Source of the DNA: Bugula neritina
Lineage: Eukaryota > Animalia > Bryozoa
Direction: 5' to 3'
Assembly (NCBI GenBank): GCA_964035545.1
Contig: OZ037765.1
Coordinates: 33,975,504-34,039,503, forward strand
DNA: 64,000 nucleotides
In this document: one piece after another, positions 12,102-44,100 of the stretch
Position numbering within the stretch: the first letter of the stretch is position 1
Layout of the letters: each line of letters begins with the position of its first letter
The notes under the pieces: generated by a model
Databases searched by the model: none
Told to the model about the DNA's origin: nothing
Seen by the model: the letters and a program-made list of their open reading frames with translations, nothing else
Made by a program: the position numbers and the translations under genes

Positions 12102-15100
12102 ATAGTGGGGGTGCCAACATGCAAAAATGGGCGGGTGGAGCGCATCAATACTAACCTTTGTTGCTATATATCACTGCAAAGCTAACATTCTACTGATCTC
12201 AGATCTGCGAGTACCTTTTTTGTATCTGGGGGGGTTCTCTCGTGAGAGGGGTGGATATACAGGGGTTCAGCATTTTTCAAGGGGGGACTATGGAACTCTA
12301 AATATTTAATTTTCTGAGTAGTTTAAGTTTGACATTAAAAATATTTTCAAGGAATGTTGTACACATATGAAACTTTCTCTAACAAAAGTTTTGACCAAAA
12401 ATAAAAAAGTGGGCGGAGCCTATAATATGACAAACTACTTTTTTGCATATACCGGATATTCTCTAAACTGCTACTTTTCTGTTCTAGCATTTAGAATGTT
12501 GATTTTTGGTATGAAAACACTCTATTGTGTTCTAATAATGCTCCCCAGTTTTCATTACATTCTGAACTATATAACTTCTTTCCCAACCATAACAAATAAA
12601 AAACATAAAACGGGAGTTATCTCCTCCGTTATAAATTATTGCATTTCTACCCAATAATATTGCTCTTTGCTGATAGGAACAACATCAGCATGATAAAAAT
12701 GTATTCTTAGTGTATTTATATTAGCTTATTGACTTATTTTGAATAACTGATTACAATCAATACTATTAATATTCAATATTTACTGTATAAATTGAGTGTC
12801 AGCAATAATTAACAGACCACTAATATTCCATTTTTTATCCATAAGTATAGTAACATAAAATATGGTTCATAAAAAAGTAATATTATGATTTCAGCATCAC
12901 AAGCAATTACTATGCTCTTTTATATCAGATATTGGTAGACATTTTAATTTTATTTATTTATAAATAAGATGGTATTTAAATTTTAATTTACAATAGATCA
13001 AGCTTTATTACAAAGTTTTGTTATCTCTAGCGTTTATATACCAAATTAAATATATTATAATTCTTCATCAGAACTGTGTTTGTTGCCATCATCATCATAA
13101 TCAGGCTCTTTGTTTGAAAAAGAAGACTGGCCACTTTTGTTGTTGCAATCGAAACATTCACATAAACCACAGCATTTCATCATCAGGCGCTTGCATTTGC
13201 ATGCTTTACTCTTGCAGCTTGCTTTTTTGTATTTACATGCTGTTAAAATCACATCTGCATTGCTCTCAAAATCATATTTTATTGGAGTCAAGCTAGTGTC
13301 CCAACCATGGTCAAAAATTGGCTGATGAAGTAAAATAGGTGTTAAAGCAAGTTGCCAAAGTGTAACTTGATAGTTGGCTCGTTTCACGTGATATTCTAAG
13401 GAATTCCTGCTAGGTGGTAGCTGTGCTTCACTGGAGACATTTTTTAAAGCCAATATTTTATATCTTCCTTCAGTGATATCATCATAGGCACCATATAGGT
13501 TGGAGACAAATCGTTCACACTCTAAGTATGTTTCATCTGATAATGGGGACCAATCATCAGAACCTAAAGACAGATTATAGCGTCCCTTTTCAAGTACCTC
13601 CAAAGCACGCTTTTTAGATATTCGGAAGATAGAACTTACTGAATCCCAACCTGTAAGTGCATGGAGTGATAACAGATTCTTGAGAACTTTTTGTGGAATT
13701 TTTTTGGCTAATTCAGAAAGAGATATATATCTTCTGTGACTCCATATTCCAACAAAGATTACTACATCTTTATTAGCCTGCTCAGTTAAAACATTACTAA
13801 AATGATGTTAGGCGCAATAATAGCAACATCGGTATCTACTGATCTTATTACTACCAAATCGTAATCACTCAGTGCATTAGCTGCGTGAAGGATTGGTCTG
13901 CTTCATCATGATTGGATTTCAATTTGTTACAATTGTAACGATAATGGTTTTGCAGAACACAGACTTCTTTGGCACTACACACTAAAAATGTACCAGCTGG
14001 AATTTTCTCAATATGTCTACTCTACACCTTCACTATGTAATCTACCAACTCATTTTTGTTGTGAATATTGCTCAGAAAAGCACTCCAGTTTTTAGGAACA
14101 GGCACGTTGTCATGAATAATGGAAATAGAGCACATCTGTTGGGCACCCCGTCTAATACGCTCTTGTGTTTTAATTGATGTTTCAGAATACACGTCAAACA
14201 CTACATCAACCCTTGTATATCCTTTGCCACATTCAAGAAATACTTCCAACATCTTCAGAGCGTAGTTATAAAAAGTGCCTGATGTTTTTGTCGAGTGAAG
14301 TATGCACATACTGTCAATAATGATCGATTTGTTGGTGGACAGTTGACTATCATCATTGGAGACCCTGTTTCCAAGATATTTCTGTTCCAAAATATGCATT
14401 AGTTGCGATATGCATATTTTTCTCATCTGTCCGTTTTCAGTAAGTAGAGCAAGAGGAATGAGACCAATTTCTTTCTCTAGAACTGTATGCAAATCTACTT
14501 CTCGGCTTTTGGCGCTTATGAGAAGTTTAGCAAATGATATTTTAGGAACATTTGGTTTAATGGCCGGTTGAAGTGGTTTAGCCACAAAGTCAAAGGAAGG
14601 AATTTTAAGCCAGTGAATAGCAGTGTAAAATGGTTTTATTGCATTCAAAAGTCTATCTTGAAAAAACTTTTGAGCCGTGTCTGCTCCCTGAGCCGTAGCG
14701 GTCACTATTGACAAGGAGGTCTCAGCATCGGGACTTACTCCAGTAGCAATATTAATAAGTTCAGTTGAATTATTGCTAAACAACTTAACATCAAACTGAT
14801 GTAATGTAAAAAAAATTGCTTGTATATCAATCTCATCCTTCATAGTTGTAATGATTGTCTTCCTTGTGTAGTGTTGATGACTGTGAGGTTATTTGGCAAA
14901 AATCCTTTTGCAAAGAGAGCAGTTGGGCTCTGATATGACTAGTTAAGAACCATTTTGTCCGAGCTTCTTCGTGGTTGCTAATGCCAATAATACCTCCAGA
15001 TGTTTTACTGTCTCGGTTCAAAGTTTGCTGCAAGACCTGATCTGGAGCCATATCTGCAAATTTTTTTCCTGTCCTTTTTTTTACGGTAAATGAACCCTTT

Positions 15101-17262
15101 GCAAACATTCCATAAACTTCCGGAGCAGATTCAGGCAAATTTAGCATATCAATAAGGTATATAGGCAGCCACCTTGAGTAGTTTGTGCCATCATACGCAA
15201 AAAATACTGGTAGCATTGCCTGCATACTGTCCAAATATAATTGCCAGTTGCCACTATGCTCAGCTCGAATAAATCCCAACATGGCTTCTACTGCATGAAG
15301 GTAAGAATTCCAGAACATTGAAAGGTTAGATTTTAATTTAGTATCAGAATCAAACTTTTTTATAGCAGTAGCAACTTTATCTGCGACAGTGGTCCGTTCA
15401 CGTAAGTTATCACCAATAGAAATATTATGATAATCTAATGGGTCAAACTGCTCATTTTCTTGAAGCCATTCCGAAAGAGATTTTAGTTTCTGCCTTGATA
15501 TTGCCTCATACAAAATCTTGTGTGCCCGTACACCTCTGTTATTATGCTTACCACATAGCACCTGTTTCACTGTAACTTCAGAATATATATCCCTGTGCAC
15601 AAAAACTTGGGCGAAGCCGCTTGGTTTTACCATTTTGTCAAGTGCTGCCATGTAATTCATCAAGATATGAAAACCGCCCATTCGAATTATTGCGTTTGAA
15701 AATTCAGTTGGTTTGTTCCATTGAATCTCTTTGGCAATCTTGTAGATAGCTTGGTCAAATGTAATTATTGAATGTTTCTGATTTAAAACTTCCATAGTTT
15801 TCTTTAGCTGCAGAAGAATAGTATAAATTGTTGATGGACCTGTTGATGGTGCATTAATAATTGGGCAATACCCAATGACTGATCTTTTATTATCTTCTGT
15901 GGCAACCAAATTTCTTACATTAAAGCTACTCCAGCTGGGGCAGTTATGTGTAGAAGGATTTATATCCAATTGAAATAGTTTGATTGGGGCAAGTCTTGCC
16001 AATAGCCATGCTGTATTTAGATTACATGAATCCTCAAGTGACTTTTTCATATTCAGTAATGTCTTTTGACTACGTTTTGTGATAAAATATGATTTTGAGA
16101 GCAATGCAGATGTGATTTTAACAGCATGTAAATACAAAAAAGCAAGCTGCAAGAGTAAAGCATGCAAATGCAAGCGCCTGATGATGAAATGCTGTGGTTT
16201 ATGTGAATGTTTCGATTGCAACAACAAAAGTGGCCAGTCTTCTTTTTCAAACAAAGAGCCTGATTATGATGATGATGGCAACAAACACAGTTCTGATGAA
16301 GAATTATAATATATTTAATTTGGTATATAAACGCTAGAGATAACAAAACTTTGTAATAAAGCTTGATCTATTGTAAATTAAAATTTAAATACCATCTTAT
16401 TTATAAATAAATAAAATTAAAATGTCTACCAATATCTGATATAAAAGAGCATAGTAATTGCTTGTGATGCTGAAATCATAATATTACTTTTTTATGAACC
16501 ATATTTTATGTTACTATACTTATGGATAAAAAATGGAATATTAGTGGTCTGTTAATTATTGCTGACACTCAATTTATACAGTAAATATTGAATATTAATA
16601 GTATTGATTGTAATCAGTTATTCAAAATAAGTCAATAAGCTAATATAAATACACTAAGAATACATTTTTATCATGCTGATGTTGTTCCTATCAGCAAAGA
16701 GCAATATTATTGGGTAGAAATGCAATAATTTATAACGGAGGAGATAACTCCCGTTTTATGTTTTTTATTTGTTATGGTTGGGAAAGAAGTTATATAGTTC
16801 AGAATGTAATGAAAACTGGGGAGCATTATTAGAACACAATAGAGTGTTTTCATACCAAAAATCAACATTCTAAATGCTAGAACAGAAAAGTAGCAGTTTA
16901 GAGAATATCCGGTATATGCAAAAAAGTAGTTTGTCATATTATAGGCTCCGCCCACTTTTTTATTTTTGGTCAAAACTTTTGTTAGAGAAAGTTTCATATG
17001 TGTACAACATTCCTTGAAAATATTTTTAATGTCAAACTTAAACTACTCAGAAAATTAAATATTTAGAGTTCCATAGTCCCCCCTTGAAAAATGCTGAACC
17101 CCTGTATATCCACCCCTCTCACGAGAGAACCCCCCCAGATACAAAAAAGGTACTCGCAGATCTGAGATCAGTAGAATGTTAGCTTTGCAGTGATATATAG
17201 CAACAAAGGTTAGTATTGATGTGCTCCACCCGCCCATTTTTGCATGTTGGCACCCCCACTAT
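12102..17262 (-). mobile_element. DNA transposon derivative with 1181-bp inverted arms (12102-13282 / 16082-17262) and a decayed large transposase-like gene
   Basis: Arms are reverse complements, with mirrored ORFs in the track and one substitution noticed. Termini are TAGTGGGGGTGCC...GGCACCCCCACTA. Internal ORF fragments lie on the - strand. Confidence 0.88.
13055..16081 (-). pseudogene. Frameshifted transposon-encoded protein with RMGGFH / NYSRWLP / DQ..QQTLNRDSKTSGGIIG motifs, a PIN/FEN1-like region (IIIDSM, VDVVFDVY, HALTGWD) and a C-terminal Cys-rich CXC-like domain
   Basis: ORFs 14833..16081, 14022..14843 and 13055..13603 lie in different frames with stops or frameshifts between them; the native N-terminus is missing. 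Superfamily not assigned. Confidence 0.7.
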
Positions 17263-18430
17263 TAGTTAAAGCTACTGATAATAATTACTTTGAACTCCCC
17301 TATACTGAAGTCATATTCTACACTATCATGTCAGCTAATTCTTCCTAAAAGATGACTGTTGCAAGAGCTTTTTGATTGTTTGAAAGCTTTTACAACAGCT
17401 TTTTACTTGTAGTTTTTGTTTATTGAGTCAATACAGCTCCATTTCCCTCTTGTTAAAGATGCAGTCAACTTAAACTTTATTGCCCAAATAGTTGTTACAG
17501 TTTTGTGAAAAAAATAAACTGTTGGCATTGGGCAAAAGATTGAGCTGTGTGGCCTTCTTCTGTGCATCGAGCACACAGCATCAGGGCTATCACAACACAT
17601 GTAGGCATCCGTGCCATACAGCATCAGTGCTTACACAATGGCTGCAACATCGTTCATTGAATATACAACTTGAGTTGCGTTTGTACCTTCACGATTTTTA
17701 GTCAGAAATTAAGGAGGAACCTGGACAAGTGTTGTTAACTGAAACTCGCTACTTTTTTCAGCAGAGGTAAAATAAACGAAATTTAAGAAAGGCTCATGGA
17801 AATATATTAAAGTATATTATTATTGTACATCATGATTACCTTATGCCATGTTGCAGTGATCGATCTGATGGATATCATTAATATCAAATTAAACTTTCCA
17901 GCTCATATATCAAATTTAAAGCTAAAATTAATTATTCAACTATTCATTTGGAATATATAGTAAATAAATGTTGTATATGCATATAAGGCATGTGATAGAT
18001 GAAGAATATAATATTGTAATGCTTCAGTAACCCTCAAAGCTATAAACACTGCACTATATAATAGATCATATACACCTAACAGTTGTGACTCAACTGCTTT
18101 AAGACAAAAATTTCAATCTAGATTAAAGCCAATTTTCATACAACTTTTACCTAAAAAATGACCAACAAACAAGTTGGCTGACTTAATTTTCTGAAACAAA
18201 CAAGCTTTTGAGTTTTGGGCGCATGTAGATATAAAATGTGATTTATTTATTTATTTGACAGTTTGAGGTTGATCGAGGGCAAAATTATCTTATACTGTGT
18301 GTTATATAATTTACTGTATTATATAATATACTGTGTGTTATATTCAGTATACTGCGTGTAGGTATAAGGTTATAGGTTATAGGTTATAGTAGGTTATATT
18401 ATGAGTCATGGTTGCTTGCCAACACATTTT

Positions 18431-24212: not shown

Positions 24213-27200
24213 TCATTCTGAACTTTGCTGTCCATTGAACTTGGGGAAAAAGAAGAGTTTTCGAAAGTGGGTTAAAGTGCATTCTGGGCGGTTAGGTACG
24301 TTACAGCCAACTTCTCTATTCTGTTTCTTTTTGAAGTACGAGATGCTGACTCTTCTCACCCTGTCTTGTATCTGTGAAAAAGTTTAAAAAAGCAATACAT
24401 ATGAAGCTATAAGTGTGCCGATTTTTTTCTCCATCAGGTATTGAATGATCATGAATATAATTAACAAATTAATGAAGCTGCAAACATCTAATAGAAATAT
24501 TCAGGCAAACGGTAGTTAGAGACTAAAACTAATTACTAGGTGTTTTAACTGAACTTGTTCTACTACTAGTTTACTGAATATCATACAGTATAATTCATTC
24601 TTTCTACTAGGTTACTGAATATTATACAGTACACTCAGTGGATGCGTTAAAATAAATTTTACACCTAGATTTAAAAGACCCAACGTACTTACTATTTTGA
24701 ACAGTTCATCTATATCTCTGTGACAGCTGTGTTTGTAGAATGTAGCCACTAGTATTCTGATAAACCATGTACCATACTTACGATGTCTGCCTGTCCTGTA
24801 GTCTGCAACAGGAAAGATAAATATAATATTCAAAGTACTATACTCAAAGTACCATACTCAAAGTATCATACTCAAAGTATCATACTCAAAGTATCATACT
24901 CAAAGTATCATACTCAAAGTATCATACTCAAAGTATCATACTCAAAGTATAATACTCAAAGTGTCATACTCAAAGTATAATACTCAAAGTATCATACTCA
25001 AAGTATCATACTCAAAGTACTATACTCAAAGTGTCATACTCAAAGTGTCATACTCAAAGTGTCATACTCAAAGCATCATACTCAAAGTGTCATACTCAAA
25101 GTATCATACTCAAAGTGTCATACTCAAAGTATCATACTCAAAGTGTCATACTCAAAGTATCATACTAAAAGTGTCATACTCAAAGTATCATACTCAAAGT
25201 GTCATACTCAAAGTGTCATACTCAAAGTGTCATATTCAAAGTATCATACTCAAAGTACTCTACTCAAAGTATCATACTCAAAGTATCATACTCAAAGTGT
25301 CATACTCAAAGTGTCATACTCAAAGTATCATACTCAAAGTGTCATACTCAAAGTGTCATACTCAAAGTATCATACTCAAAGTGTCATACTCAAAGTATCA
25401 TACTCAAAGTATCATACTCAAAGTATCATACTCAAAGTATCATACTCAAAGTATCATACTCAAAGTATCATACTCAAAGTACTATACTCAAAGTGTCATA
25501 CTCAAAGTATAAGACTCAAAGTATCATACTCAAAGTATCATACTCAAAGTACTATACTCAAAGTGTCATACTCAAAGTGTCATACTCAAAGTGTCATACT
25601 CAAAGTATCATACTCAAAGTGTCATACTCCAAGTATCATACTCAAAGTGTCATACTCAAAGTGTCATACTCAAAGTGTCATACTCAAAGTATCATACTCA
25701 AAGTGTCATACTCAAAGTATCATACTCAAAGTGTCATACTCAAAGTGTCATACTCAAAGTGTCATACTCAAAGTGTCATACTCAAAGTGTCATATTCAAA
25801 GTATCATACTCAAAGTACTCTACTCAAAGTATCATACTCAAAGTATCATACTCAAAGTGTCATACTCAAAGTGTCATACTCAAAGTATCATACTCAAAGT
25901 GTCATACTCAAAGTATCATACTCAAAGTATCATACTCAAAGTATCATACTCAAAGTATCATACTCAAAGTACTATACTCAAAGTGTCATACTCAAAGTAT
26001 AATACTCAAAGTATCATACTCAAAGTATCATACTCAAAGTACTATACTCAAAGTGTCATACTCAAAGTGTCATACTCAAAGTGTCATACTCAAAGTATCA
26101 TACTCAAAGTGTCATACTCAAAGTGTCATACTCAAAGTGTCATACTCAAAGTGTCATACTCAAAGTATCATACTCAAAGTGTCATACTCAAAGTATCATA
26201 CTCAAAGTGTCATACTCAAAGTGTCATACTCAAAGTGTCATACTCAAAGTGTCATACTAAAGTGTCATACTCAAAGTATCATACTCAAAGTGTCATACTC
26301 AAAGTATCATACTCAAAGTGTCATACTCAAAGTGTCATACTCAAAGTGTCATACTCAAAGTGTCATACTCAAAGTGTCATACTCAAAGTGTCATACTCAA
26401 AGTGTCATACTCAAAGTATCATACTCAAAGTACTCTACTCAAAGTATCATACTCAAAGTATCATACTCAAAGTGTCATACTCAAAGTGTCATACTCAAAG
26501 TATCATACTCAAAGTGTCATACTCAAAGCTGTCTTCCACAGAATAGATTATAATATTTCATACATACTCTCTGTACTTGGCTTCATGATATAGAAGTCAT
26601 CGACATCTAGGTGAGTGAATCTATCAAAGTGAATATTTGGAGACGCATGTTGACCTACAGAAGACTCACTCCCAGCTGTTGCTGAAGATGAGGGTAACGG
26701 GTCAGTAGTTACTGGTGAGACGGTGGCTGAATTTTGTGACTGTACAGCATTCCCAAGATCCACAGCAGCTAAAAACCAAATGAGCAATGTTATGCCAGAT
26801 TTCCCTGTTACACTATTTACAAGGAGTTCCTGGACATATACCGGTCTAGAGAAAGAGCAGACATGTTTTTGTATATTTTCTATTGGCTGCTGCAAAGTGA
26901 TGCAGGTAAGTATAAGTTGATATTCTCATTTAATAGTCATATTGCATGTGGTAATAAGAATCAGTGACTACAAAGCTTTCACCAATAGCATGATATAAAA
27001 CTGTTAATGTCAAGGCTTACTATGGATGGGATATATACATTGTGATAAAACTGTCAAAGCTAAGTCACTCACGGCCTGAACAAGCCTGAAGAATGATGAG
27101 TTTGGGTTTTCCTCTCATGGCAGGGAATTTACTAGCAGAGAGTAAATCTTTGACTTCTGACAAGTTGACAGGTTTAAGGTGTTTGTCATGGAAGATGTTT

Positions 27201-27653
27201 CCAGAAGTTCCGTGTGACATGATGACTAGAATGAACATGTCCAGATGCTGGTGGTCTCTGTGGGTGGTCTCTTTCCTCACTTCTGATAATATTTCCTGCA
27301 AAAATTATCTCAGGAATATTTTTATCAATCATTGATTTATGTTGCCTATTTTACACATGTCTTCCTTTGAAATGTGAAAAGAGTTATGATTTTAGGTTGA
27401 CCTATATCAACGAATATAGTTAGTTCATATACAAAAATAATGAAATACTCACTTCTCTGGTCAAATCAAACCACCGCCTCTCTCCTCCGGCAATATCAAA
27501 CCCCATATCTTTGAACAAGGTACTAATATTCTCATAGTCAATACCAGAACCATGTCGGGTCATCCCAGTTATTTCACTGTCATCATCTCGATAGAATCGT
27601 CCGTTGTTTATGATCATGGCGCGCCCTCTAACAGGGTCACTCATTTTGTACAC
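24213..27653 (-). CDS. Caspase (peptidase C14) p20 + linker + p10 exons of gene A
   Basis: RGRAMIINN, TRHGSGID, VIMSHG, GKPKLIILQACSG-P-AVDLG, DDFYIMKPSTE-NYRTGRHRKYGTWFI, TLTHFRKLFFFP across five exons with consistent phases. Confidence 0.92.
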
Positions 27654-30600
27654 CTGTAATCACAAATAGATTGCCATCTTTTAAGTATTACACACAACTT
27701 TTTTAACAATGTTTAATAGCAATTCTTATGGAAGGATAACTAACTATGAATGACTATGTAAGTAATAAAAATAGGCAACAAAAGTAGAAGTGTCTCACCT
27801 TTCTCTGCTCATTGAAAAGCTGCGTAATTTCGTTTTTAGTTGTGGGCTTCAGTTTCATACCATTCATGTGAGCAATCAGAGGTTCAAGGTCACTTTGAGT
27901 AAAGTCAGCATATCCTTCCTCTTCCACATCAGAACATTCACTGATGTCATCATCTTCACATGAGGTTGAGACAGGCTGAGCAAAGCGCATCTTTTTTGCT
28001 GGTACTTCTAGTTCTAGAATACAATACTCTCTGATGTCAACATCTTGGAAGTAAAATGGTTCTGTAAATCGTGTAAGTGTTTGAAGTACAAAAAGAATTT
28101 TCGATGATATATTATCTCAGTATTGAGTAATTAAATAATATCCTGTGACAGAATATGCCAACTAAAACCATGTATTATTGAGCTAGCACAGATTTATTGA
28201 GGTGAGCAGAACAGAAATTATGCAACTCTAGAGGAAACACTTTTTAGGATCTACAGCAGTTAAAAATCTACTTGTGTTTATTGTATAGTAATTGATGAGA
28301 AACCTTTAATGAGTGTGATATTGTTATCACAGTTCTCAAGTAAGGTGAAGTTGGTTGGTTTGTTACATTGTATTATGAATTAATATGTGATTTACACAGC
28401 TAAAATATTTATATTTATATTAGAATAAAATATATTATATATATATTACAGTTGATAAATAGGATTACACTGCCTTCTAATTAGTATAATTTACATACCA
28501 GGAACACACGATGATGCAATAAAAATCTCACCAGTTTTCAGATGTTCAGCAAAAAACTTCTTCAAATTTTCAGCTTCTTCCTTAGCCAATGGCTCACCTA
28601 TTGACACCAGATAAAATCAATGTGTATGGGAGATTTAAAGAGGAGTAGATTATTGGAAAAACATTATAATAAACTCAGACAGAAACATAGACTCACATGG
28701 GTAGAGTAGAGCACTTGGGATCTCCTCACCACCACACAGAGTTGTTGAAGATCCACTACACAGTCTGGGACTTGGTGTAGGATGTTTCAAGGAACGAAGA
28801 CACCACAGAGGATTGAGCACTTTCTTAGGACAAGGAAGTCCTAGCAGAAGGCAGTGAGCACAGTAGCATGTAGTGACTAGTCTAGTTGCTTTCCAAGTTT
28901 CTAGGACATGTCTAAGGATGTTGTTGTTGGTGGTGATGAGTCTCTCCCACATTCTGCTGATGTTGGCAGCATTAGATGACACGTAGAGTAACACCTTTCT
29001 AGATTTGTAGTCGTGTACCAGCTGTGTGTAGATCCCATCTTGATAGACATTGGCTCCATTTTTTTTTACTTTCATCACAGCAAACTCATCTGGAAACAGC
29101 TCTAACAAGCCAACCGTCATTTGCTGGTAGACGTAGTGTGGCAGAGCTAGGCCATTGAACTGTGTTTCAACTTGAAGGAGCAGATTTTGTGAGTGAGAGT
29201 AGGAAGTGCTGTAACGACTTTTGGCAAACTGTGGGACAACAAAACATGGCTTTTCAGAGTTGACATGTATAGGACCATACAGCAACCGGAATGTTTGGAG
29301 CAAGCAGATAGCAACTTCAACATTCTCAGAACTGTGAAATATTGTTTCATTTTGAATCAAATAAGCAAGAAGAGAGTGCATCATCAAGCCAGTGTCTGTG
29401 AAATGAGTAACAGGTTCCTCAAAGTCCTGCTTCTCAACAGGCATCCCATTCTTTGAATAGCACGGCTGGAACTTGTCAACTCTACTCTGCCATACGTTAG
29501 GATCATGATGATACAAGACACAGAGAAGTTTGGTAACTTCCGAAATCTTGTGGAATATGTATGGCTGGAGAGAGCTGATTTCTTTATACCACAAAACTTT
29601 GCCGCAGTCATGCATGTATGTGAGGATTATGTCCAGCTGACTTGACTCAATGTGTTGAAGTTCTGTTTGCACGTATTTCAGTATCTCATCAAAGGTACTG
29701 TACACAGAGGGAATAGACAGCACTTTTTCATTCATTTCCTCCCAAACCAAAGGTAAAGGTTTCACAAAATGTTGACTGCTTTGAAGAAGAGACTTCTTGA
29801 TCAGGTCAAACACTTCATACTTATCATCTTTTCCCAACTCATTAATGTCCTCACCAGAAAAGACTCCTTCAGTTGATTTACTGAAATGTTTGATTTGAGC
29901 AAATTCTCCACCCAATGCTTTCTCTTCTCTAATCATCTCCTCACACAGCTGATTTGAAGCGTCTAGAAAATTCTTTCGAAGCTTTTGAAATTCTGTACTT
30001 TGAAACTTATCTTTATGTGTGAAGATAAGTTTTGGAGCACCCAGAGTTGGGTTAGCCAGATACAGGTGAGACATGTAATCAAAGGCTAATCTTCTAACAG
30101 CTTCTCTGTGTGTTGATTCACTTGAAATCTCTCTGTACTGTTCCATGTTGACTACTATGACTGGAATACAGTTCTGTCTCAGTGTCAGTTGGTAGGTGAT
30201 ATGGTAGACCTCCTGGCCTCCCATATCAATGAGACGGAGTACTGTACCATCCACCTCCACCTCTTCAACATTAAACACCTTTGTTGTCTCATCTCTCACA
30301 GCATCTGGCCCTCTGTTGGTCAGAACTCTCTTTCTGTCAGCATTCTGTAATGTTCTGATTAGACTGGTTTTTCCAGCCATCGTATTACCCAGCACAGCTA
30401 TAGTAGCAAATGGTAGACTTCTACCAGCACCTTTAGCCAAATCTGTGTAATATTGTCTCACAGCATCTACTCCTCTCTCACATACCTCTAGTGGAGGAGA
30501 TGTGAGAGCATCACAACCTTCAACATCCAGTGCACGAAGTTGAGTTAGCTGTAGTATCTCAGGATCTAAGGATGTCAGGGACTCATTCTCAGATATATAC

Positions 30601-33600
30601 AGTTCTTGCAGACTACTCAGTGTGTACACAGGAGATGGTAAATTGGTGAAGTTATTATCTGATATGTACAGTCTCTCTAACTTCTGTAGACTCCGCATGC
30701 TGTTAAACAACATACATAATAGGAGATATAATAAGGAATATGACACATATAACATACACACTGTAGAAGAGAATGCACACAGGTAATCAATTGATATAAT
30801 ATTGTAAATGTTTTTCATATTAGACATCAGCTTTTCTTACAAATACTTCAGTGCATTGAAGTACTTCAAGTTAATTGATAGACTGTCATGTCAAGGTGGA
30901 CATTTAAACAGTTTTCTATATTATCTAGAAGATTTTCATCTCATGGAGGAAAGACTATTGAGGACAGCCTAGTTGGAAACCTCAGAAATCTTTACTAGGT
31001 TCCATAAAATTATTTTTGAACAGAGCTTATAGCAGCTAGTATAATTTTATATCAATTTCTGCAGATCTAGACTTCATGCAGTAATTAGCTCACTTTCCTT
31101 GTTGAGGGATAATTCTTAATAGGGTGTACTTGCTAATAGGTCCTTCATATTAATAGATAACAGAAGCTTTAAAGTGATGATGTAACTAAGGGTAGTGTGT
31201 GTGTGACCTTTGCATAAACTGTTCTGGTAAATATCACAAATAATAGAGAGTTGAGTAATTATTTAAAAAGATGGCAAGATATTAACTATCAGTATATCTA
31301 TTCATCTACAGAACTTGATAAAATAAATAGTACATTGTTATCTGGTGAAAGTTATATGACTTTACTGTATCCTCTGTGAACATAATATAATATTCACATC
31401 TTAGCAATCACTGCCTTTTATCTTAACTGTACATACTGTAGATAGTCAATGTATAGCTATGCTAGCCTGCAGCTGGGCACCATATAATACTCAACCACCC
31501 AAATAATAGCAGCACGTGGTACAAGTAGAACAACTCAGCCAATCAACACTCAGCAACAATCTGTAAAGTTGAGTCACCACTCAATTCAAAGTTACAAATT
31601 CTACTGATAGCTGGTCTAAGATCAGATAGCTGTGAGATAATACATTTATATCCTTAGAGTAAACAGGTACTAGTACTGTACACACAGTAAGCTACAAACT
31701 CTGTAGCTGTCAACCAATAGAAATATCATCTCCTTAACCAATCACAATGCAAGTCACTTTCGTAATCAACCACAACTAAGTGTAGGGCCACACTACGAGA
31801 ATACGCTAGTGACCTGCCACACACATTGCAAAAATGTATTAGCCAGTGTTAGCGTTAAATTTACTGCTCGCTACAGGCGTTTGTTTTCAAACCTACGTCA
31901 TCGGCAAAGTGATTTGGATATTATAAAAGCGGGAATGCAAACTATATAAAACTGTTTTAAAAGTTAAATCGTAAATCAAAATAAAAAAGTGAAAATCCCA
32001 AATTCTGGGCTAAACCCGTGGCCCTATTATAATTAAATCTCACTCTGCACTAAATACTAGTTAGCAGTATGAATAGGTGGGAGTACTCTGTGTAGTGTAT
32101 ATTCCCCTCACTTGTTTACCATGATGAGCTATTATACATACTACAGTATTATTCTACACTATAATATAATACACACCTGTTTGGTAGAGTTGACAGTTTA
32201 CAGTTCCACATGTACAACTCTCTCAATGATAGTAAGGATGTGAATATATTGTCAGGTAGACCTTCAGATAGGTTATTCTCTGGTATATTCAATACCTCAA
32301 GATTCTTCAGTGAAGATATGCTGTAACATAACATACAGGGATAAATACATTCTGTGAAGTTATAGAGTACAACTTACACGAGGATTAGTGTGATATGATT
32401 GTGTGCCAGTGTGGCTAGAGGAAAGAGAAGACAACACTATTGACAACAGTGAAGACTATTTATATATTATTACTCTATTTTACTTCAATACTTTATGCCA
32501 GCTAAACATGGGATAATGATAGACTGAGTGAGCACTGATTAAATTAAATGGTCAGTTGGAAGTGATAAGTGAAAGTGTTGAATAAGTTGAAACTTCAACA
32601 GAATATCCCCAACTTGAGTGTTAACTGTAGAAACCTTTGCTATGTATGCAGACAGTTGCTGAGTTACTGATGAGATATTATATTTATTACAATATCATTC
32701 TACACTATAATATAATACACACCTGTTTGGTAGAGTTGACAGTTCACAGTACTCCATGTACAACTCTCTCAATGATAGTAAGGATGTGAATATATTGTCA
32801 AGTAGATCTTCAGATAGGTTATTCCATGATATATTCAATACCTCAAGATTCTTCAGTGAATATATGCTGTAACATAATATTATACAGGTATAGAAACACT
32901 CTGTAGCTCATACATACAAAGTGTGATAACAGAGTTTTAGAATATTATTATGACTCTGTATTTCTACCATCTAACCTCTAGACAACCTTGGGCATAGCAG
33001 TTGTATAATGAGTAACTATGAGGGGATAACTACTATAATGAAGAAGTAGAAAGCTCACTTTATTTATAACCTAGGAACTAGTAAATCATAGACTGAGAAT
33101 AAACGTATTCAGGTAGCAGTGACTGAAAGAGTAATTAGTAAAAGTTTGAATGAGTTTTGTTACAGTTTGGTTTGAGCTGCAGAGTTCCTATGGCAGAGGT
33201 GGGCAACTGGGCCTACCAAGGGCCACTTGTGGACCTTTACCCATTTTTCAGTAGCCCTTTTATTGCTTAAGATAAGTAAAAACTGTCATTTTTTTCTGAT
33301 TAGCAATGCATAGGTTTGGTGACAAATTACTTTATTATAATAAAGTTTATTATGTGTACAAACATGGGGCCCTTCGCTTTTGCTGACCTCTGAACTTGGC
33401 CCTTGAGCAAAAGGAGTTGCCCACCCCTGCCCTATGGCATGACAGTAGTATGAGAGACAGTGTTGGTTAGATTAGAGAAAAGATAACTCTAATAAACAAA
33501 GAAAGTAGTTTACTATATTATATCCTAAATACTAGCAAACTGTAGCCTGGGCACTGAATAAGTTGAAAGGCTTTTAGCTCGTGCTTTATTATAATTTTGA

Positions 33601-36600
33601 ATAGTCTAGACTCTAGAGTAATAGCAGACAATGATCTTCAAGCTGAGTGTAGAAATGTAGCGAGTACATTAGAATACAACAACTACTTATTGGTAAAACT
33701 CTGAATAAGTTCAAGTCTCAACAGACCATCTTCACTTGAGTGTTAACTGTAGAAACCTTTGCTATGTATGCAGACAGTTGCTGAGTTACTGATGAGATAT
33801 TATATATATTACAGTATCATTCTACACTATAATATATTACACACCTGTTTGGTAGAGTTGGCAGTTTACAGTTCTCCATGTCCAACTCTCTCAATGATAG
33901 TAAGGATGTGAATATATTGTCAGGTAGACCTTCAAATAGGTTATTCTGTGACATATTCAATACCTCAAGATTCTCCAGTGAAGATATGCTGTAACATAAC
34001 ATACAGATATAGAAACACTCTGTAGCTCATACATACAAAGTGTGATAACAGAGTTTTAGAATATTATTATGACTCTGTATTTCTACCATCTAACCTCTAG
34101 ACAACCTTGGACATAGCAGTTGTATAATGAGTAACTATGAGGGGATAACTACTATGATGAAGAAGTAGAAAGCTCACTTTATATATAACCTAGGAACTAG
34201 TAAATCATAGACTGAGAATAAACGTAGTCAGGTAGCAGTGACTGAAAGAGTAATTAGTAAAAGTTTGAATGAGTTTTGTTACAGTTTGGTTTGAGCTGCA
34301 GAGTTCCTATGGCAGGAGCGGGCAACTGGGCCTACCAAGGCCCACTTGTGGCCCTTTGCCCATTTTTCAGTGGCCCTTTTAATGCTTAAGATAATTAAAA
34401 ACTGTCATTTTTTTGGATTAGCACAGCATAGGTTTGGTGACAAATTACTTTATTAGCCTATAATAAAGTTTATTATGTGTACAATCATGTGGCCCTTCAC
34501 TTTGGCTGACCTCTGAACTTGGCTCTTGAGCGAAAAGAGTTAGTGTTTTATTATAACTTTGAATAGTCTTGACTCTAGAGTCTAGAGCAATGATAGACCA
34601 TGATCCTCAAATCTATTGTTAACTGTAGAAACCTTTGCTCTGTATGCAGACAGTTGCTGAGTTACTGATGAGATATTATATTTATTACATAGTATGAATA
34701 GTCACTAAATACTAGCTAGCAGTATGAATAGTTACTAAATACTAGCTAGCAGTATGAATAGTTACTAAATACTAGCTAGCAGTATGAATAGTCACTAAAT
34801 ACTAGCTAACAGTATGAATAGTCACTAAATACTAGCTAGCAGTATGAATAGTCACTAAATACTAGCTAGCAGTATGAATAGTCACTAAATACTAGCTAGC
34901 AGTATGAATAGTCACTAAATACTAGCTAGCAGTATGAATAGTCACTAAATACTAGCTAGCAGTATGAATAGTCACTAAATACTAGCTAGCAGTATGAATA
35001 GTCACTAAATACTAGCTAGCAGTATGAATAGTCACTAAATACTAGCTAGCAGTATGAATAGTCACTAAATACTAGCTAGCAGTATGAATAGTCACTAAAT
35101 ACTAGCTAGCAGTATGAATAGTCACTAAATACTAGCTAGCAGTATGAATAGTCACTAAATACTAGCTAGCAGTATGAATAGCCACTAAATACTAGCTAAC
35201 AGTATGAATAGTCACTAAATACTAGCTAGCAGTATGAATAGTCACTAAATACTAGCTAGCAGTATGAATAGTCACTAAATACTAGCTAGCAGTATGAATA
35301 GTTACTAAATACTAGCTAGCAGTATGAATAGACACTAAATACTAGCTAGCAGTATGAATAGTCACTAAATACTAGCTAGCAGTATGAATAGTCACTAAAT
35401 ACTAGCTAGTAGTATGAATAGTCACTAAATACTAGCTAGCAGTATGAATAGTCACTAAATACTAGCTAGTAGTATGAATAGTCACTAAATACTAGTTAGC
35501 AGTATGAATAGTCACTAAATACTAGCTAGTAGTATGAATAGTCACTAAATACTAGCTAGCAGTATGAATAGTCACTAAATACTAGCTAACAGTATGACTA
35601 GTCACTAAATACTAGCTAGCAGTATGAATAGTCACTAAATACTAGCTAGCAGTATGAATAGTCACTAAATACTAGCTAGTAGTATGAATAGTCACTAAAT
35701 ACTAGCTAGCAGTATGAATAGTCACTAAATACTAGCTAGCAGTATGACTAGTCACTAAATACTAGCTAACAGTATGAATAGTCACTAAATACTAGCTAGC
35801 AGTATGAATAGTTACTAAATACTAGCTAGTAGTATGAATAGTCACTAAATACTAGTTAGCAGTATGAATAGTCACTAAATACTAGTTAGCAGTATGAATA
35901 GTCACTAAATACTAGCTAACAGTATGACTAGTCACTAAATACTAGCTAGCAGTATGAATAGTCGCTAAATACTAGCTAGCAGTATGAATAGTCCCTAAAT
36001 GGTCCTGTGATACTCAATAATATGACTACAATGTAATACTACCATAACAATATAGTACCTGGTCCAGTTAGCATTACTGTCTACTCCAGATACATTCAGA
36101 TGTGTGAGATGAGGAAACACTGTGTTGATATTTGGAGGAATGTCATGCTTCAGTATAACATGAGTAACTGTATGATGTCTACTTTTATCATCGATAGTGT
36201 ACAGTGTAGTAGCTTTCGACACCCAATCATGATCAGCTCCATCTATACTGGATGTGTTGAACCACACCTCATACTCCTCTACAAAATATGCACCACTTTA
36301 TAAATAATAACTTTGATATCAAATAACAGAGTGTCTCAACACTATAAACAGTATTTAATTAAATGTGGAGAGTTCACAACTCCAAACAACATATTAACTT
36401 CAGTTGTTATATCAAAGGAGCAGACTGATAATATAGTATATATGACTCAGTATAGTCTTCAAACACCTTCTAATATTCTCTATAATATATAATAGTGACT
36501 GGAAGTCACTTGTATCTCTAGACTCAGCACCAGCAAAGTATGTACAGAACACCTTGATTCTAGTATCTGTAATACTAGTGATACACTCTTCTATAGAAGT

Positions 36601-37566
36601 AGTGAAAGTTATATCAAGAACAACAAGAAATATGTACTAGTAACTTGATGCATACAGCATCATCTGATTGGCTAAAAACACCAACCAATGGGGAGTGACT
36701 AGACATATACTCACATCATACAAGTGGTTGGACATGAGACAATACAAAGTATCTGTGTTACACAAAATGTGATATTGGTCACAGAATATCTATTTATATA
36801 ATTTACTAATTTCTCTCAGAGTCACCTGGAGACTGAGTTAGCCTAGGGCCACACGGTGCGTATTTTCGCATGCGAAAATTGAAATCACAAGTAGCAAAGG
36901 TATCCACTGTGCGCGTTGAGAAAACCTTCGCACTTGTCGCTCTGCATTTTCAACGCAAGTGCGAATCGTCTCTGTCGTCGTCATCTAATTGGCTGGTAGC
37001 TATTCAGCGAGCCCAATTTCTTTATTTAGTGCTATATTCCAGTAAATTGCGTTTTATTGAAAGCGAGTGCGATTTAAAAATGAAAGCTTTATTTATCACG
37101 CATCACTGACGCTACAGTGGACACCTTTGCTACTTGTGATTTTAATTTTCGCATGCGAAAATACGCACAATGTGGCCCTAGGCTTAGAGGTGGAGTCACA
37201 AATTGAGGTAGAGGCGGAGTTACAGGCTGACATATATTAAGATTATTATATCCTGTGGGAAGTGCTTTTAAGATTTGTATTTAATATTTGCTTACTTTCC
37301 ACAGTTGGAGTTGAAGATGAAGTTGAGGACGAAGACACAGCCTGAGCTGGAGGCGGAGTCACATACTGAGTTAGAGGCGGAGTCAGAAAATGAGTTGAAG
37401 GCAGAGTCATATGCTGAGTGACAGACTGAGCTAGAGGCGGAGTCACAGACTGAGCTGGAGGCGGAGTCACAGACTGAGCTGGAGGCGGAGTCACAGCCTG
37501 AGCTGGAGGCGGAGTCACAGCCTGAATTGGAGGCGGAGTCACAGACTGAGCCTCTGAATCACTCAT
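24213..37566 (-). CDS. Gene A: LRR-ROC-COR-caspase fusion (Roco-caspase), ~1382 aa. Exons 37566-37296, [37255-36825 MITE-interrupted, probably skipped], 36278-36059, 33988-33845, 32866-32723, 32320-32177, 30699-28697, 28597-28532, 28061-27799, 27653-27453, 27295-27073, 26768-26568, 24802-24693, 24371-24213
   Basis: Manual splicing at GT-AG sites gives matching phases and 4149 nt (1383 codons) with no internal stop. Motifs: LRR LxxLxLxxN; P-loop GNTMAGKTS; DMGGQ; THKD; COR-like region; caspase YKMSDPVRGRAMIINN, MSHG, KPKLIILQACSG, GTWFI and C-terminal TLTHFRKLFFFP. Confidence 0.85.
24832..26528. repeat. 14-bp minisatellite (TCATACTCAAAGTR)n, ~120 units, filling an intron inside the caspase p10 region
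   Basis: Tandem units lying between donor 26567 and acceptor 24803. Confidence 0.97.
28697..30699 (-). CDS. Large exon of gene A: last LRRs + ROC GTPase + COR
   Basis: Core of ORF 28650..30827. LRRs (LERLYISDNNF, LQELYISENESL, LRALDVEGC), Roco-type LTSPPLEVCERGVDAVRQYY linker, G1 GNTMAGKTS, G3 DMGGQ, G4 THKD, then LTYMHDCGKVLWY typical of COR. Confidence 0.9.
31783..32026. mobile_element. Short MITE with TAGGGCCAC...GTGGCCCTA termini
   Basis: 9-bp TIR resembling the ends of the 36841 element. Confidence 0.5.
32177..32320 (-). CDS. LRR cassette exon A3 (144 nt, phase 2-2)
   Basis: ISSLKNLEVLNIPENNLSEGLPDNIFTSLLSLRELYMWNCKLSTLPN. Confidence 0.85.
32723..32866 (-). CDS. LRR cassette exon A2 (144 nt, phase 2-2; absent from the ORF track)
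   Basis: Manual translation IYSLKNLEVLNISWNNLSEDLLDNIFTSLLSLRELYMEYCELSTLPN with ttacag / gtgtgt boundaries. Confidence 0.85.
33845..33988 (-). CDS. LRR cassette exon A1 (144 nt, phase 2-2)
   Basis: ISSLENLEVLNMSQNNLFEGLPDNIFTSLLSLRELDMENCKLPTLPN. Confidence 0.85.
34690..35998. repeat. Same 30-bp satellite, ~43 units, between the cap exon and the LRR cassettes of gene A
   Basis: Tandem units read directly. Confidence 0.97.
36841..37183. mobile_element. PIF/Harbinger-type MITE with TTA TSD, inserted in putative exon 2 of gene A
   Basis: ~70-bp TIRs GCCTAGGGCCACA..GTGCGTATTTTCGCATGCGAAAAT; TTA at 36838-40 and 37184-86; the empty site is visible in gene B (~9330). Confidence 0.9.
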
Positions 37567-41118: not shown

Positions 41119-44100
41119 TGTTATATATAGAAATGACACGTTTCATTTATCTATTATACTTAATGCATCAGTACATAGGTAATGCAGCTTTTCTTTTTGA
41201 TATGTATTAGTAGGTAGCATTTTTGTCTTTAATGTTTTAATAACGGGAGTAGCAATGGACATGCTAGCTCAGCAGCCTGTAATTAGGTCAGGCAGTAGTT
41301 AGTTAGCTCCTAGATAATATACAGCTTGATATGCAATACTAGGCCCACTCTAATTACGATGATGAAAGAGACAATTAAAACAACAAATAATGAGAGACTG
41401 TCTGCTATGCTATTATTATGTTTTTACATCTAAGTAGGACTAATCAAACAATATGATACTCATTAGCATAGCTATACATTGCTGCCCCAAATATTATTAT
41501 TGGATGAGAACTTGAATAGATACATATAGACGTGTAGCCCCAACCCCCCCCCCCCCCTTTCATAACACCAGATCACATGCTCAATCTAATATTTCTCTTT
41601 GTGGATATATATATATATATATACACGGACTGAGAAGAGGTAGAAAAAAGAAAAGATAGACATAGAAGAGAGCAGCTGAAAAGTGAGACAGCAGACTTAC
41701 AAACGACGCAACCCCAGAATACCTGTTCCTGCAGAAACTCCTACAAGAATAAGGTAATCTATTAATGCTTTATATTTAATATCATAAACGCAAAGCCAAG
41801 CGAGTAGATAATTATTTTGGGTATAATAAAAATTACTTAAAATAGTTATAACAATTTTTGGTGGAGGTGCCAAATTCCTAATTTAGCATTACATAGAGGC
41901 TAAATTCTTGCAGTGAATCTGTTAAAACAGATTCTGGAAAATTGTGTGATTGAAGTATATATATTGCTACATTTCTAGTTTGTAGCAATTAACTCACTGC
42001 TGCTAGTTTAGCCTACAGTCGGGGACTGTGGATGATTTAAGTTTAACACAATAGTCTGGGACTATTAGTGTTCAATAGGTATAGTCACGGACTATATTTA
42101 GGGGCCCGAGGTATTGGTAGCAACAACGTGGTTTGCCGCTTGTGGGGACGCCTACAAGTGTTCACCAACAACCTATAGTATAAGCAGCTGTGTCTGGGAC
42201 ACATATTTGGTAATACACTGGGTGTATTTATGTTTATAGCTCTAGGCTGTAGTTCATTTGCCATTAGACTGCTTTGAAAACTTGCACGGGGTGCAAAGGT
42301 ATTGGGTTGCTGATTAGAAGCAACGCCATTGACTATTTGAAAGTCATAAACACTGCATAGTCAGTATTTAAATAATTGCTTGCTTGAGTTTGGGCTGAGA
42401 TAATTGAAGAGTCAATTACTTTATTTTGAGGGTGAATATTTAAAAGGGAATTAAAAGTAATAAAAATTAGACTAAAAATTAACAGTAAAATAAGAAATAT
42501 TTGGTAGCAATTTAAATAATAATAAAACCAGAATAACTATAAAACAGGCTATTAGTCACACAGTAATTGCATAATAAAATTAATTGAAAAAGTAAAATTT
42601 AAAACAAAATAGAATTTAGGTGCCAAATTAATTTTCAACAACCAAAGTTAAAATGGCCAGCAACACAACAACTAAAACAACATCAACTGACGCGATTACC
42701 ACACCTACTCGGTCAACGACATATGAAGATGCAGATGGTGATAAAGTAAAGGAAGTTATGGACTTCTGGGACTCACTCCCTGAACGATACAAAGTAATGG
42801 TTTTGGAAAAGAAAGCCAGAACAACTGGAACTAGGCAGAAAGTGGTTAGCCACACTACTACCACCACTCATACCTTACCAATTACAACAACACCACAAGT
42901 AAGCCATACCATACAGCCAGCCACATTATTTCCCCCGCCTCCAGTTACTTCGAGAACACCGCCAGGTCTTGCCATGCCAACTGAGCCTCAACTTGACATA
43001 AGCCACCATTACCGCCCATACACAACCCCATCTCATTACGTACCGACCTTCATCATGCCGGAGTTTTCAAATTATGAAACCTTTTCAGGCGCACCTAATG
43101 AAAGTTGGGAAAACTTCATCGACCGATTTGAAATACATATCTTAACCTACCAATTTAACGATCAGCAAAAGGCATTAAATCTACCAAGGACATTTCGTGA
43201 ACCAGCTTTCACGAAATATAAAGACCTTATCCGCGAAAAACCCAATTGCACAACAAATTACATCCTACTGAAAGAAGAATTGCGAAAAATATTTACTGTT
43301 CACTCTAGACTGCAAGCCCGAAACCTGAATAACATTGTGCAAGGGAAAAGAACCGTAGGTGATTATTATGTAGAATTAGCGGCAGCATGCCAATCAGCAT
43401 ATGCCGATGTCCCTGAAATTCATAGGAACAAATTCCTCCTCGATAAATTTACCCAAGGACTAAGAGACCCTATCCGCCGAGTAGTAGACTCAAAAAGTAA
43501 TTTGTCACTAAAACAAGCTATAATCGAAGCAGAGAAAGCAGAGCTCTCTGAATTTCCGACCAACCCTCCCAAACTAGTCGCTCAAGTACAGGAGAGAGAC
43601 GACATAGAGCCTCTCAGAAGACAAATTGAAAATCTGAGAGAAATGATACAAAGGCAAACTCATCCTAACAGAGAACAACCCCTACAAACAAGATATGACA
43701 ACAGGCCAGAACAAAATTTCACAGCATACAGGAACGCACCAGGTCACAGAAATTTTGCTCCAAACACAGATAATCAAAAACCAAAACATTTTAATTTCAC
43801 CTGCTACAAGTGCAATGAAAGAGGACACCGTGCTCGAGAGTGTCGCTCAAAACCCATTCATGTCATACAAACTGAAAATATGAATGATGAGGACTACGCA
43901 GAGTATATGTCAAGCAGGCCACCTGAAGATGCAGAGGCTACAATAAATGTTGTTATTATCTAAATTGAAGGAGAGTTGACCAAACGAAATTAAGACAATA
44001 ATTTTTACTCATTTACATACACAGCTCTTTATTAAATAATTTTCTGAATACCAAAGCCTAGGACAATAATATACTATACAGTAAACATTTCCGTTTGGCA

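What the first reader, a model, noticed from the sequence alone, without database searches (positions are those of the whole stretch)
24213..37566. Single-chain LRR-ROC-COR-caspase: a candidate self-contained sensor/GTP-switch/executioner
Seen: a phase-consistent splice chain joins the LRR-ROC-COR exon through two linker exons (28597-28532, 28061-27799) directly to a complete caspase. There is no stop and no separate CARD/DED prodomain. Established: Roco proteins (LRRK1/2, DAPK1, MFHAS1) dimerise via ROC-COR in a nucleotide-dependent way, and initiator caspases activate by induced dimerisation. The well-known animal Rocos carry kinase or death domains, not a caspase. Inference: ligand binding on the LRRs could drive COR dimerisation and activate the caspase directly, giving an NLR/inflammasome-like circuit in one protein with a GTPase in place of NACHT. 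I do not recall this architecture being characterised, but I cannot run the search.
Basis: partly seen in the sequence, partly recalled or inferred. Interest (0 to 1): 0.95.

Follow-up and report, generated by a model that had tools for sequence, protein, structure and literature searches.

The report
Bryozoan LRR-Roco GTPase-caspase fusion gene
This is a real, spliced gene of a moss animal (bryozoan) that joins a fast-changing recognition surface, a GTP-binding switch and an intact cell-death protease in one 1,382-residue protein; the design was already noted in bacteria and, in part, in amphioxus, but I found no paper that describes the bryozoan family or tests any member.

Summary
Confirmed. 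Thirteen GT-AG-spliced exons (minus strand, 37566-24213) give one 1,382-aa frame: Pro/Thr repeat, LRRs, Roc-COR (G1-G4 intact), a non-death-fold linker and a complete caspase (His, QACSG Cys, Arg/Gln/Arg pocket). RNA contigs cover exons, not introns, and show the COR-to-linker joint (3 studies) and linker-to-caspase joint (2); the middle joint (28532/28061) was not among the rows shown. A Watersipora RefSeq model has the same eight introns in position and phase. It is an expanded bryozoan family (probably Bugula; a second copy lies in this window), with 144-nt LRR cassette exons hypervariable at exposed positions and caspase modules mismatched to Roc-COR modules between paralogs. Amphioxus has the same architecture, probably independently. 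It is not wholly undescribed: bacterial LRR-Roc-COR-caspase (Kaur 2021) and amphioxus 'LRRs-caspase' (Zhang 2008) were predicted as immune shortcuts; none is tested in the papers found. Best reading: a single-chain cytosolic sensor whose Roc-COR dimer switch gates an initiator-like caspase. The bacterial Roco dimerises when GDP-bound or empty, so GTP may be the off state. This scan reported the family before on other DNA of this genome.

The parts
37296..37566 (-). Exon 1 (first coding exon): Met plus Pro/Thr/Ser/Gln low-complexity repeat, aa 1-90
   Evidence: 24-bp tandem repeat; same exon in the tandem paralog at 9692-9446; no RNA test
36059..36278 (-). Exon 2: N-terminal cap / first atypical LRR, aa 91-163
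   Evidence: 53-71% identical exons in paralogs L004, L006 and the window paralog; no Pfam hit
33845..33988 (-). Exon 3: 144-nt phase 2-2 LRR cassette (two LRRs)
32723..32866 (-). Exon 4: 144-nt phase 2-2 LRR cassette
32177..32320 (-). Exon 5: 144-nt phase 2-2 LRR cassette
   Evidence: RNA cassette-to-cassette joints 32320/32177 in X2 and X7
28697..30699 (-). Exon 6 (2003 nt): last LRRs, Roc GTPase (G1 P-loop at 30389, G2 at 30293, G3 DxxG at 30227, G4 THxD at 30020), COR-A, COR-B and a conserved CxHC...C cysteine cluster near 28862
   Evidence: Pfam; motifs kept in 67-75 of 76 homologs; AlphaFold pLDDT 90; best folds LRRK2 Z 24.3, Methanosarcina Roco2 Z 22.5, LRRK1 Z 22.1
28532..28597 (-). 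Exon 7 (66 nt, phase 1-1): single helix after COR
   Evidence: exon 6-7 joint in RNA of 3 studies; equivalent 84-nt exon in Watersipora and 93-nt candidates in paralogs
27799..28061 (-). Exon 8 (263 nt, phase 1-0): acidic, largely disordered linker with an Asp-rich xSD motif (candidate self-cleavage or phospho site); no death fold
   Evidence: joint to exon 9 in RNA of 2 studies; low pLDDT in the homolog model
27453..27653 (-). Exon 9: caspase large subunit, part 1, with the S1-pocket Arg (RHGS, codon at 27557)
   Evidence: Peptidase_C14 1.2e-4; RNA joints
27073..27295 (-). Exon 10: caspase large subunit, part 2, with catalytic His (SHG, 27214) and Cys (QACSG, 27082)
   Evidence: Peptidase_C14 3.6e-13; matches to caspase-6/-3 structures
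26568..26768 (-). Exon 11: long Ser/Thr/Pro intersubunit linker (Asp four residues after QACSG) and start of the small subunit
   Evidence: RNA depth at 26560-26754
24693..24802 (-). Exon 12: caspase small subunit with the second S1-pocket Arg (24788) and GTWFI motif
24213..24371 (-). Exon 13: end of the small subunit and TGA stop
746..9692 (-). 5' half of a tandem paralog: exon 1' 9692-9446, exon 2' 8763-8535 and six 144-nt LRR cassettes (6413-6270, 5131-4988, 4105-3962, 2781-2638, 1756-1613, 889-746); open frame of 446 aa that runs off the window

Best explanation
The gene encodes a cytosolic single-chain sensor-switch-protease, one member of an expanded bryozoan family acting in defence or non-self-triggered cell death. 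Shown: one spliced frame, LRR array, Roc-COR fold with intact G motifs, metazoan-type Asp-specific caspase with intact catalytic and S1 residues, no death-fold prodomain, expression, family expansion and LRR hypervariability. Inferred: the caspase behaves as an initiator (long intersubunit linker; monomeric until dimerised) and Roc-COR takes the place of the CARD/DED plus adaptor platform. At rest the GTP-loaded, LRR-restrained protein is a monomer and the caspase is off. A ligand on the concave LRR face, or a change in nucleotide state, shifts Roc-COR to its dimer, which brings two tethered caspases together. They self-cleave in the intersubunit linker and possibly at the Asp-rich motif of exon 8, releasing an active protease that cuts effector caspases or other death or inflammation substrates.
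For: Frame and residues. RNA joints. Same introns in Watersipora. Paralogous contigs L002-L004, L006, L009, L012 and L014 all have caspase exons downstream of Roc-COR. Exposed LRR positions are the most variable (entropy 2.1 versus 0.7 bits), with omega 9.8 on 10 exposed codons of the 9 window cassettes (LRT p 0.002). Roc-COR and caspase modules are mismatched between paralogs. The homolog model has separate LRR-Roc-COR and caspase folds joined by a helix and a disordered linker. Roco oligomer state depends on nucleotide (PMC5714945); forced dimerisation activates caspases (cited in PMC2575513). The same slot holds CARD, Death, GT4 or OTU in other animal Rocos.
Against: No ligand, GTPase activity, dimer, cleavage or killing has been shown for any member. 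The selection signal rests on 9 related cassettes; the non-exposed codons also give omega 2.8 (p 0.046), and across 19 cassettes the contrast (1.3 versus 0.84) is not significant. The COR dimer surface was not modelled. Some paralogs have altered caspase pockets (HACSG, EVCSG, ETCSG), so not all need be killers. No expression data under infection.
Confidence: 0.62

Rival explanations
1. The fusion is real and gated, but the trigger is self-state or tissue turnover rather than microbes: allorecognition between colonies, polypide regression (brown-body formation), metamorphosis, or sensing of guanine-nucleotide or organelle stress.
For: Colonial bryozoans use cell death in allo-incompatibility (mentioned in PMC8195603). 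Polymorphic LRRs fit allorecognition as well as pathogen sensing. The vertebrate Rocos act in trafficking and stress (PMC6337361).
Against: Dozens of paralogs with shuffled LRR cassettes and swapped effectors look more like an arms race than a developmental switch. Parallel systems in bacteria and brown algae are read as anti-invader.
Confidence: 0.18
2. The protein is a non-lethal signalling protease or scaffold: activation cleaves a cytokine-like or signalling substrate, or the caspase domain recruits and tunes other caspases (cFLIP-like for the divergent paralogs), without killing the cell.
For: Paralogs vary at the S1 pocket (Gln to His or Glu; second Arg lost in L004) while keeping His and Cys. 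QACSG departs from the QAC[RQG]G consensus quoted in PMC2575513.
Against: This copy keeps Arg, Gln and Arg of the Asp pocket and both catalytic residues, as do the Watersipora members.
Confidence: 0.14
3. Two neighbouring genes (an MFHAS1-like LRR-Roc-COR and a short-prodomain caspase) that are mostly transcribed apart; the fusion is a minor read-through or a modelling artefact.
For: The exon 7-8 joint was not displayed and no contig spans the gene. AATAAA signals lie in intron 7 at 28282 and 28198. Some Watersipora models end after COR (P0044, P0047). Skipping exon 7 makes a stop.
Against: Exon 6 has a splice donor and splices to exon 7 in 3 studies; RNA depth is zero across intron 7, so there is neither a 3' UTR nor a 5' start there. 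All eight introns are conserved in another genus, and the order is fixed in every paralog examined.
Confidence: 0.05

Closest known systems
Roco family, MFHAS1/MASL1-type LRR-Roc-COR (also LRRK1/2, C. tepidum Roco)
   Same: LRR-Roc-COR tandem, G1-G4 motifs and fold (Z 17-24 to LRRK2, LRRK1 and prokaryotic Rocos); databases name the homologs 'MFHAS1 homolog'.
   Different: C-terminal caspase instead of nothing, kinase or death domain; long-branch bryozoan clade; multi-copy, with cassette LRR exons.
Bacterial LRR-AP-GTPase(Roc)-COR-effector counter-invader proteins (Kaur et al. 2021, PMC8195603)
   Same: Same domain order; caspase is named among at least 24 C-terminal effectors; read as anti-invader; several paralogs per genome.
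   Different: Here the protease is a metazoan-type caspase with spliceosomal introns shared with an amphioxus caspase, so it is not a transferred bacterial gene; one effector type is fixed across the family. Both are predictions only.
Amphioxus 'LRRs-caspase' shortcut proteins (Zhang et al. 2008, PMC2575513); Branchiostoma LRR-Roc-COR-caspase models such as XP_002614028.1 and XP_035697785.1
   Same: At least 12 Branchiostoma models have LRR, Roc, COR and Peptidase_C14; four internal caspase introns are shared; proposed as a direct link from recognition to apoptosis.
   Different: The paper does not mention Roc, COR or GTPase, and I could not match its model ids (figures are not held). Amphioxus has a shorter linker without the xSD motif, different COR and linker introns, and Roc-CORs that group with GT4, OTU or Death-bearing amphioxus paralogs; one clade with the bryozoan genes is rejected (AU p 9e-32).
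Brown-algal ROCO candidate immune receptors (PMC11378527, PMC3341825)
   Same: Expanded LRR-Roc-COR family with modular LRR exons, shuffling and diversifying selection; one group has a C-terminal peptidase.
   Different: One LRR per exon versus two per 144-nt exon here; their peptidase is IPR009003 (trypsin-like, from my knowledge), not a caspase.
NLR inflammasome / Apaf-1 apoptosome with initiator caspases (caspase-1, -2, -9, CED-3)
   Same: Logic of repeat sensor, nucleotide switch and proximity-activated caspase; best fold matches of the caspase include caspase-9, procaspase-1 and CED-3.
   Different: No NACHT or NB-ARC, no CARD, DED or PYD, no adaptor; a GTPase that is expected to form dimers rather than a STAND wheel; everything in one chain.

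Membership tests
Roco proteins | Roc G domain with G1-G4 motifs | tested here: met
   Pfam Roc 5e-7; GNTMAGKT, DETT, DMGG, THKD
Roco proteins | COR domain directly after Roc | tested here: met
   Pfam COR-A only weak (0.002, below cut-off), but the fold aligns over 538 residues with LRRK2 (Z 24.3) and with prokaryotic RocCOR; COR-A and COR-B hits in Bugula homolog P0038
Roco proteins | GTP binding and hydrolysis, nucleotide-dependent monomer-dimer cycle | not testable with these tools
   Needs biochemistry; known for CtRoco
Caspases (C14A) | His-Cys dyad in SHG and QACxG motifs | tested here: met
   SHG at 27214, QACSG at 27082; Ser at the x position is unusual but usual in this family
Caspases (C14A) | Arg/Gln/Arg S1 pocket for P1 Asp; large and small subunits with linker | tested here: met
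   RHGS, QAC and the small-subunit Arg are present; caspase fold in the homolog model, TM 0.76-0.86 by target
Caspases (C14A) | Asp-specific proteolytic activity | not testable with these tools
   Needs an assay
Classical initiator caspases | CARD or DED prodomain | tested here: not met
   No Pfam hit in exon 8; the homolog linker is one helix plus disorder. It may work like an initiator but is not a classical one.
NLR / STAND receptors | NACHT or NB-ARC ATPase | tested here: not met
   The nucleotide domain is a Ras-like Roc
Amphioxus LRR-Roc-COR-caspase clade | Monophyly of Roc-COR with the amphioxus caspase-bearing proteins | tested here: not met
   AU test p 9e-32 on a quick tree of 24 rows with long branches; an ancient fusion followed by effector swaps in amphioxus is not excluded
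Diversifying immune receptor family | Multi-copy expansion and positive selection on the binding surface | tested here: inconclusive
   Expansion met; omega 9.8, p 0.002 for 9 window cassettes, but not significant for 19 cassettes
Diversifying immune receptor family | Binds a non-self ligand or is needed for defence | not testable with these tools
   No data

The most novel reading that the evidence does not exclude
Bryozoans run a large, recombining repertoire of one-protein 'Roco-caspase' receptors in which a GTPase dimer switch, not a STAND ATPase wheel, directly fires an Asp-specific caspase. LRR cassettes and caspase modules are shuffled separately, and the same design arose independently in amphioxus and bacteria. 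This would be a further route to caspase activation in animals beside inflammasome/apoptosome platforms and death-receptor complexes, and a direct enzymatic read-out of the Roco cycle.
Probability: 0.4. Interest if true: 0.88.

Novelty: new variant of a known kind. Interest (0 to 1): 0.7.

Why it matters
If the switch gates the protease, this is an adaptor-free way of activating an animal caspase and a candidate main intracellular receptor class in a little-studied phylum that hosts defensive symbionts. It also makes a long-disputed point testable: which nucleotide state of Roc-COR is the active, dimeric one. A tethered caspase reports dimerisation directly as cleavage, which bears on how LRRK2-type proteins are regulated. 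The repeated appearance of LRR-Roc-COR-caspase in bacteria, amphioxus and bryozoans suggests that Roc-COR is a general interchangeable alternative to NACHT or NB-ARC in immune receptors.

Tried and rejected
(1) My first acceptor for exon 11 (26845) gave stops; the correct one is 26768. (2) A hidden death-fold prodomain was rejected. (3) A horizontally acquired bacterial gene was rejected: 12 introns, metazoan-type caspase, and bryozoan Roc-CORs outside the prokaryotic clade. (4) One clade for the bryozoan and amphioxus fusions was rejected on Roc-COR; the careful 50-row tree did not finish, and no caspase tree was built because no outgroup caspases could be fetched. (6) All contigs fetched by exact protein were genomic, so no full-length cDNA was obtained. 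(7) Ten literature searches found no paper on bryozoan Roco-caspases; the Huang et al. 2008 amphioxus immune paper is not held, and most subscription journals are not searched. The joined model was built only in a script to check the frame and was never searched or folded, so the full-architecture fold is that of a Watersipora homolog (P0147). No junction-pattern search was run.
Full report
Observation. The window is AT-rich animal DNA. On the minus strand, 13 exons from 37566 to 24213 splice at GT-AG introns with matching phases into one frame of 1,382 aa with a single terminal stop. Exon-wise Pfam scans give LRRs (exons 3, 6), Roc and a weak COR-A (exon 6), Peptidase_C14 (exons 9, 10) and nothing in the linker. 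Roc keeps G1-G4, and the caspase keeps the catalytic His and Cys and the Arg, Gln and Arg of the Asp pocket.

Transcription. Contigs of three RNA runs from three studies cover the exons and have zero depth in introns 5 and 7, which run X15 (kind not on record, behaves as DNA) covers. They contain the exon 6-7 joint (X1, X2, X7), the exon 8-9 joint (X2, X7) and the exon 9-10 joint (X1, X7). The exon 7-8 joint is not among the displayed rows (10 hidden). One X1 contig has 135 letters ahead of the exon 6 part, more than exon 7 supplies, while intron 7 is empty; this is suggestive only. Most contigs are 90-99% alike, showing many paralogs, so the joints cannot all be assigned to this copy.

Family. 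Homolog searches with exon 6 return dozens of proteins at 27-83% identity. They include Watersipora subatra RefSeq models with LRR, Roc-COR and caspase in one chain (XP_067935483.1, XP_067947674.1, XP_067948342.1 and others) and Bugula neritina GenBank models (KAF6039231.1, KAF6026298.1). Mapping XP_067935483.1 on its chromosome shows the same eight introns, in position and phase, from the last LRR cassette to the last exon, including both linker exons. Genomic contigs of close paralogs all carry the caspase exons downstream of Roc-COR. A second paralog starts at 9692 in this window, with six LRR cassettes. The organism is a bryozoan, probably Bugula neritina or a close relative (inference).

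Structure. An AlphaFold model of exon 6 (pLDDT 90, pTM 0.87) matches LRRK2 (Z 24.3, 538 aligned), Methanosarcina Roco2 (22.5), LRRK1 (22.1) and C. tepidum Roco (17.6), well above small GTPases. A model of the Watersipora homolog P0147 (pLDDT 84) shows LRR-Roc-COR, one helix, a disordered acidic stretch and a caspase; Foldseek gives LRRK1, CtRoco and LRRK2 for the first part and caspase-9, procaspase-1 and CED-3 for the second. There is no death fold. A CxHC...C cluster at the end of COR is nearly invariant, possibly a metal site (inference). An Asp-rich xSD motif recurs in the linker of 8 of 13 bryozoan proteins by a strict pattern, with variants in this gene, and in none of 6 amphioxus proteins; it may be a self-cleavage or phosphorylation site (inference).

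Signs of an arms race. The LRRs come as 144-nt phase 2-2 exons that can be gained, lost or skipped in frame; copy number differs between paralogs (3 and at least 6 here; 1, 5 and 4 seen in L003, L004 and L006). Variation concentrates on the exposed positions after the beta-strand leucines (mean entropy 2.1 bits against 0.7 for the non-exposed positions; permutation p about 1e-5). Codon models give omega 9.8 for 10 exposed codons in the 9 window cassettes (p 0.002 against 1) and 2.8 for the rest (p 0.046); over 19 cassettes 1.3 and 0.84, not significant. The sample is small and cassettes may convert each other, so this is moderate evidence. Modules are mismatched between paralogs: L004 is 81% identical to this gene in exon 6 but 46% in caspase exon 10, where it is 77% identical to L006; L009 is 68% in exon 6 but 88% in exon 10. 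This fits recombination between switch and protease halves. Some paralogs carry altered pockets (HACSG, EVCSG, ETCSG).

Beyond bryozoans. At least 12 Branchiostoma models from several species have LRR-Roc-COR-caspase, and sister paralogs carry GT4 glycosyltransferase, OTU or Death domains in the same slot; Lingula and Batillaria Rocos carry CARD or Death there. The amphioxus gene shares the four internal caspase introns but not the COR or linker introns. From memory, this four-intron pattern is that of caspase-2/-9; I could not test it. In Roc-COR trees the bryozoan genes form one long-branched clade and the amphioxus caspase-bearers mix with their non-caspase paralogs; holding all caspase-bearers together is rejected (p-AU 9e-32). 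Independent fusions are the simpler reading, though an old fusion with later swaps is not excluded.

Mechanism. Established: initiator caspases are activated by dimerisation, and artificial dimerisers suffice (cited in PMC2575513); the C. tepidum Roco is mainly dimeric when empty or GDP-bound and monomeric with GTP (PMC5714945); MFHAS1 oligomer state depends on nucleotide (PMC6337361). Inferred: Roc-COR replaces the CARD-adaptor platform; the GTP-loaded monomer is off, and a ligand on the LRRs or a nucleotide shift favours the dimer and fires the caspase. I give this 0.62. Rivals are a trigger from allorecognition or tissue turnover (0.18), non-lethal signalling or decoy function (0.14) and two separate genes (0.05).

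Comparison and novelty. It is a member of the Roco family and has a true caspase domain; it is neither an NLR nor a classical initiator caspase, though it may work like both together. Kaur et al. 2021 list caspase among the effectors of bacterial LRR-AP-GTPase-COR proteins. Zhang et al. 2008 reported amphioxus 'LRRs-caspase' shortcuts without noting the GTPase. Brown-algal ROCOs show shuffled LRR exons and, in one group, another peptidase. I found no paper on the bryozoan family or any functional test, within a library that lacks most subscription journals. Verdict: real, a new variant of a known kind, interest 0.70. Earlier notes of this scan describe the same family on other pieces of this genome with 50-109 copies; I did not verify those counts and do not use them as support.

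Noticed in passing
window 746-9692 (-): 5' half of a tandem paralog with six LRR cassette exons and an open frame; introns 87-96% identical to those of the studied gene, including the same 30-bp minisatellite (7530-8455 versus 34691-36000). It continues off the window.
   Followed up: yes
window 12096-17268: Element with perfect 1187-bp inverted arms (12096-13282, 16082-17268) around broken ORFs (16254-14833, 14843-14022, 13603-13055, minus strand) ending in a Cys-rich tail; no Pfam hit. Probably a DNA transposon lying between the two paralogs; the arms overlap the ORF ends, so an assembly artefact is possible.
   Followed up: partly
window 42653-43963 (+): Retrotransposon gag ORF with zinc knuckle.
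   Followed up: no
window 24822-26528: 14-bp minisatellite of 122 copies fills the intron between caspase exons 11 and 12; the same intron is about 160 bp in paralog L003.
   Followed up: no
window 28697/28061: Skipping the 66-nt exon 7 keeps the phase but creates a TAA at the new joint, which would give an LRR-Roc-COR product without caspase (possible decoy or NMD isoform).
   Followed up: no
L004 13270-14060; L006 13076-14702; L003 5549-5770; L009 7217-7438: Paralogous caspases with altered active-site motifs (EVCSG, ETCSG, HACSG; second S1 Arg lost in L004), suggesting changed specificity.
   Followed up: partly
L008 217-2967 (+): Intronless 916-aa ORF in an ENA metagenome contig with Pannexin-like (LRRC8-type) + LRR + Peptidase_C14: another LRR-caspase fusion, with a channel domain.
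   Followed up: no
Proteins P0261, P0263, P0265-P0284 (Branchiostoma): Amphioxus LRR-Roc-COR paralogs with GT4 glycosyltransferase, OTU or Death domains in the caspase slot; P0261 and P0263 carry both GT4 and caspase.
   Followed up: partly
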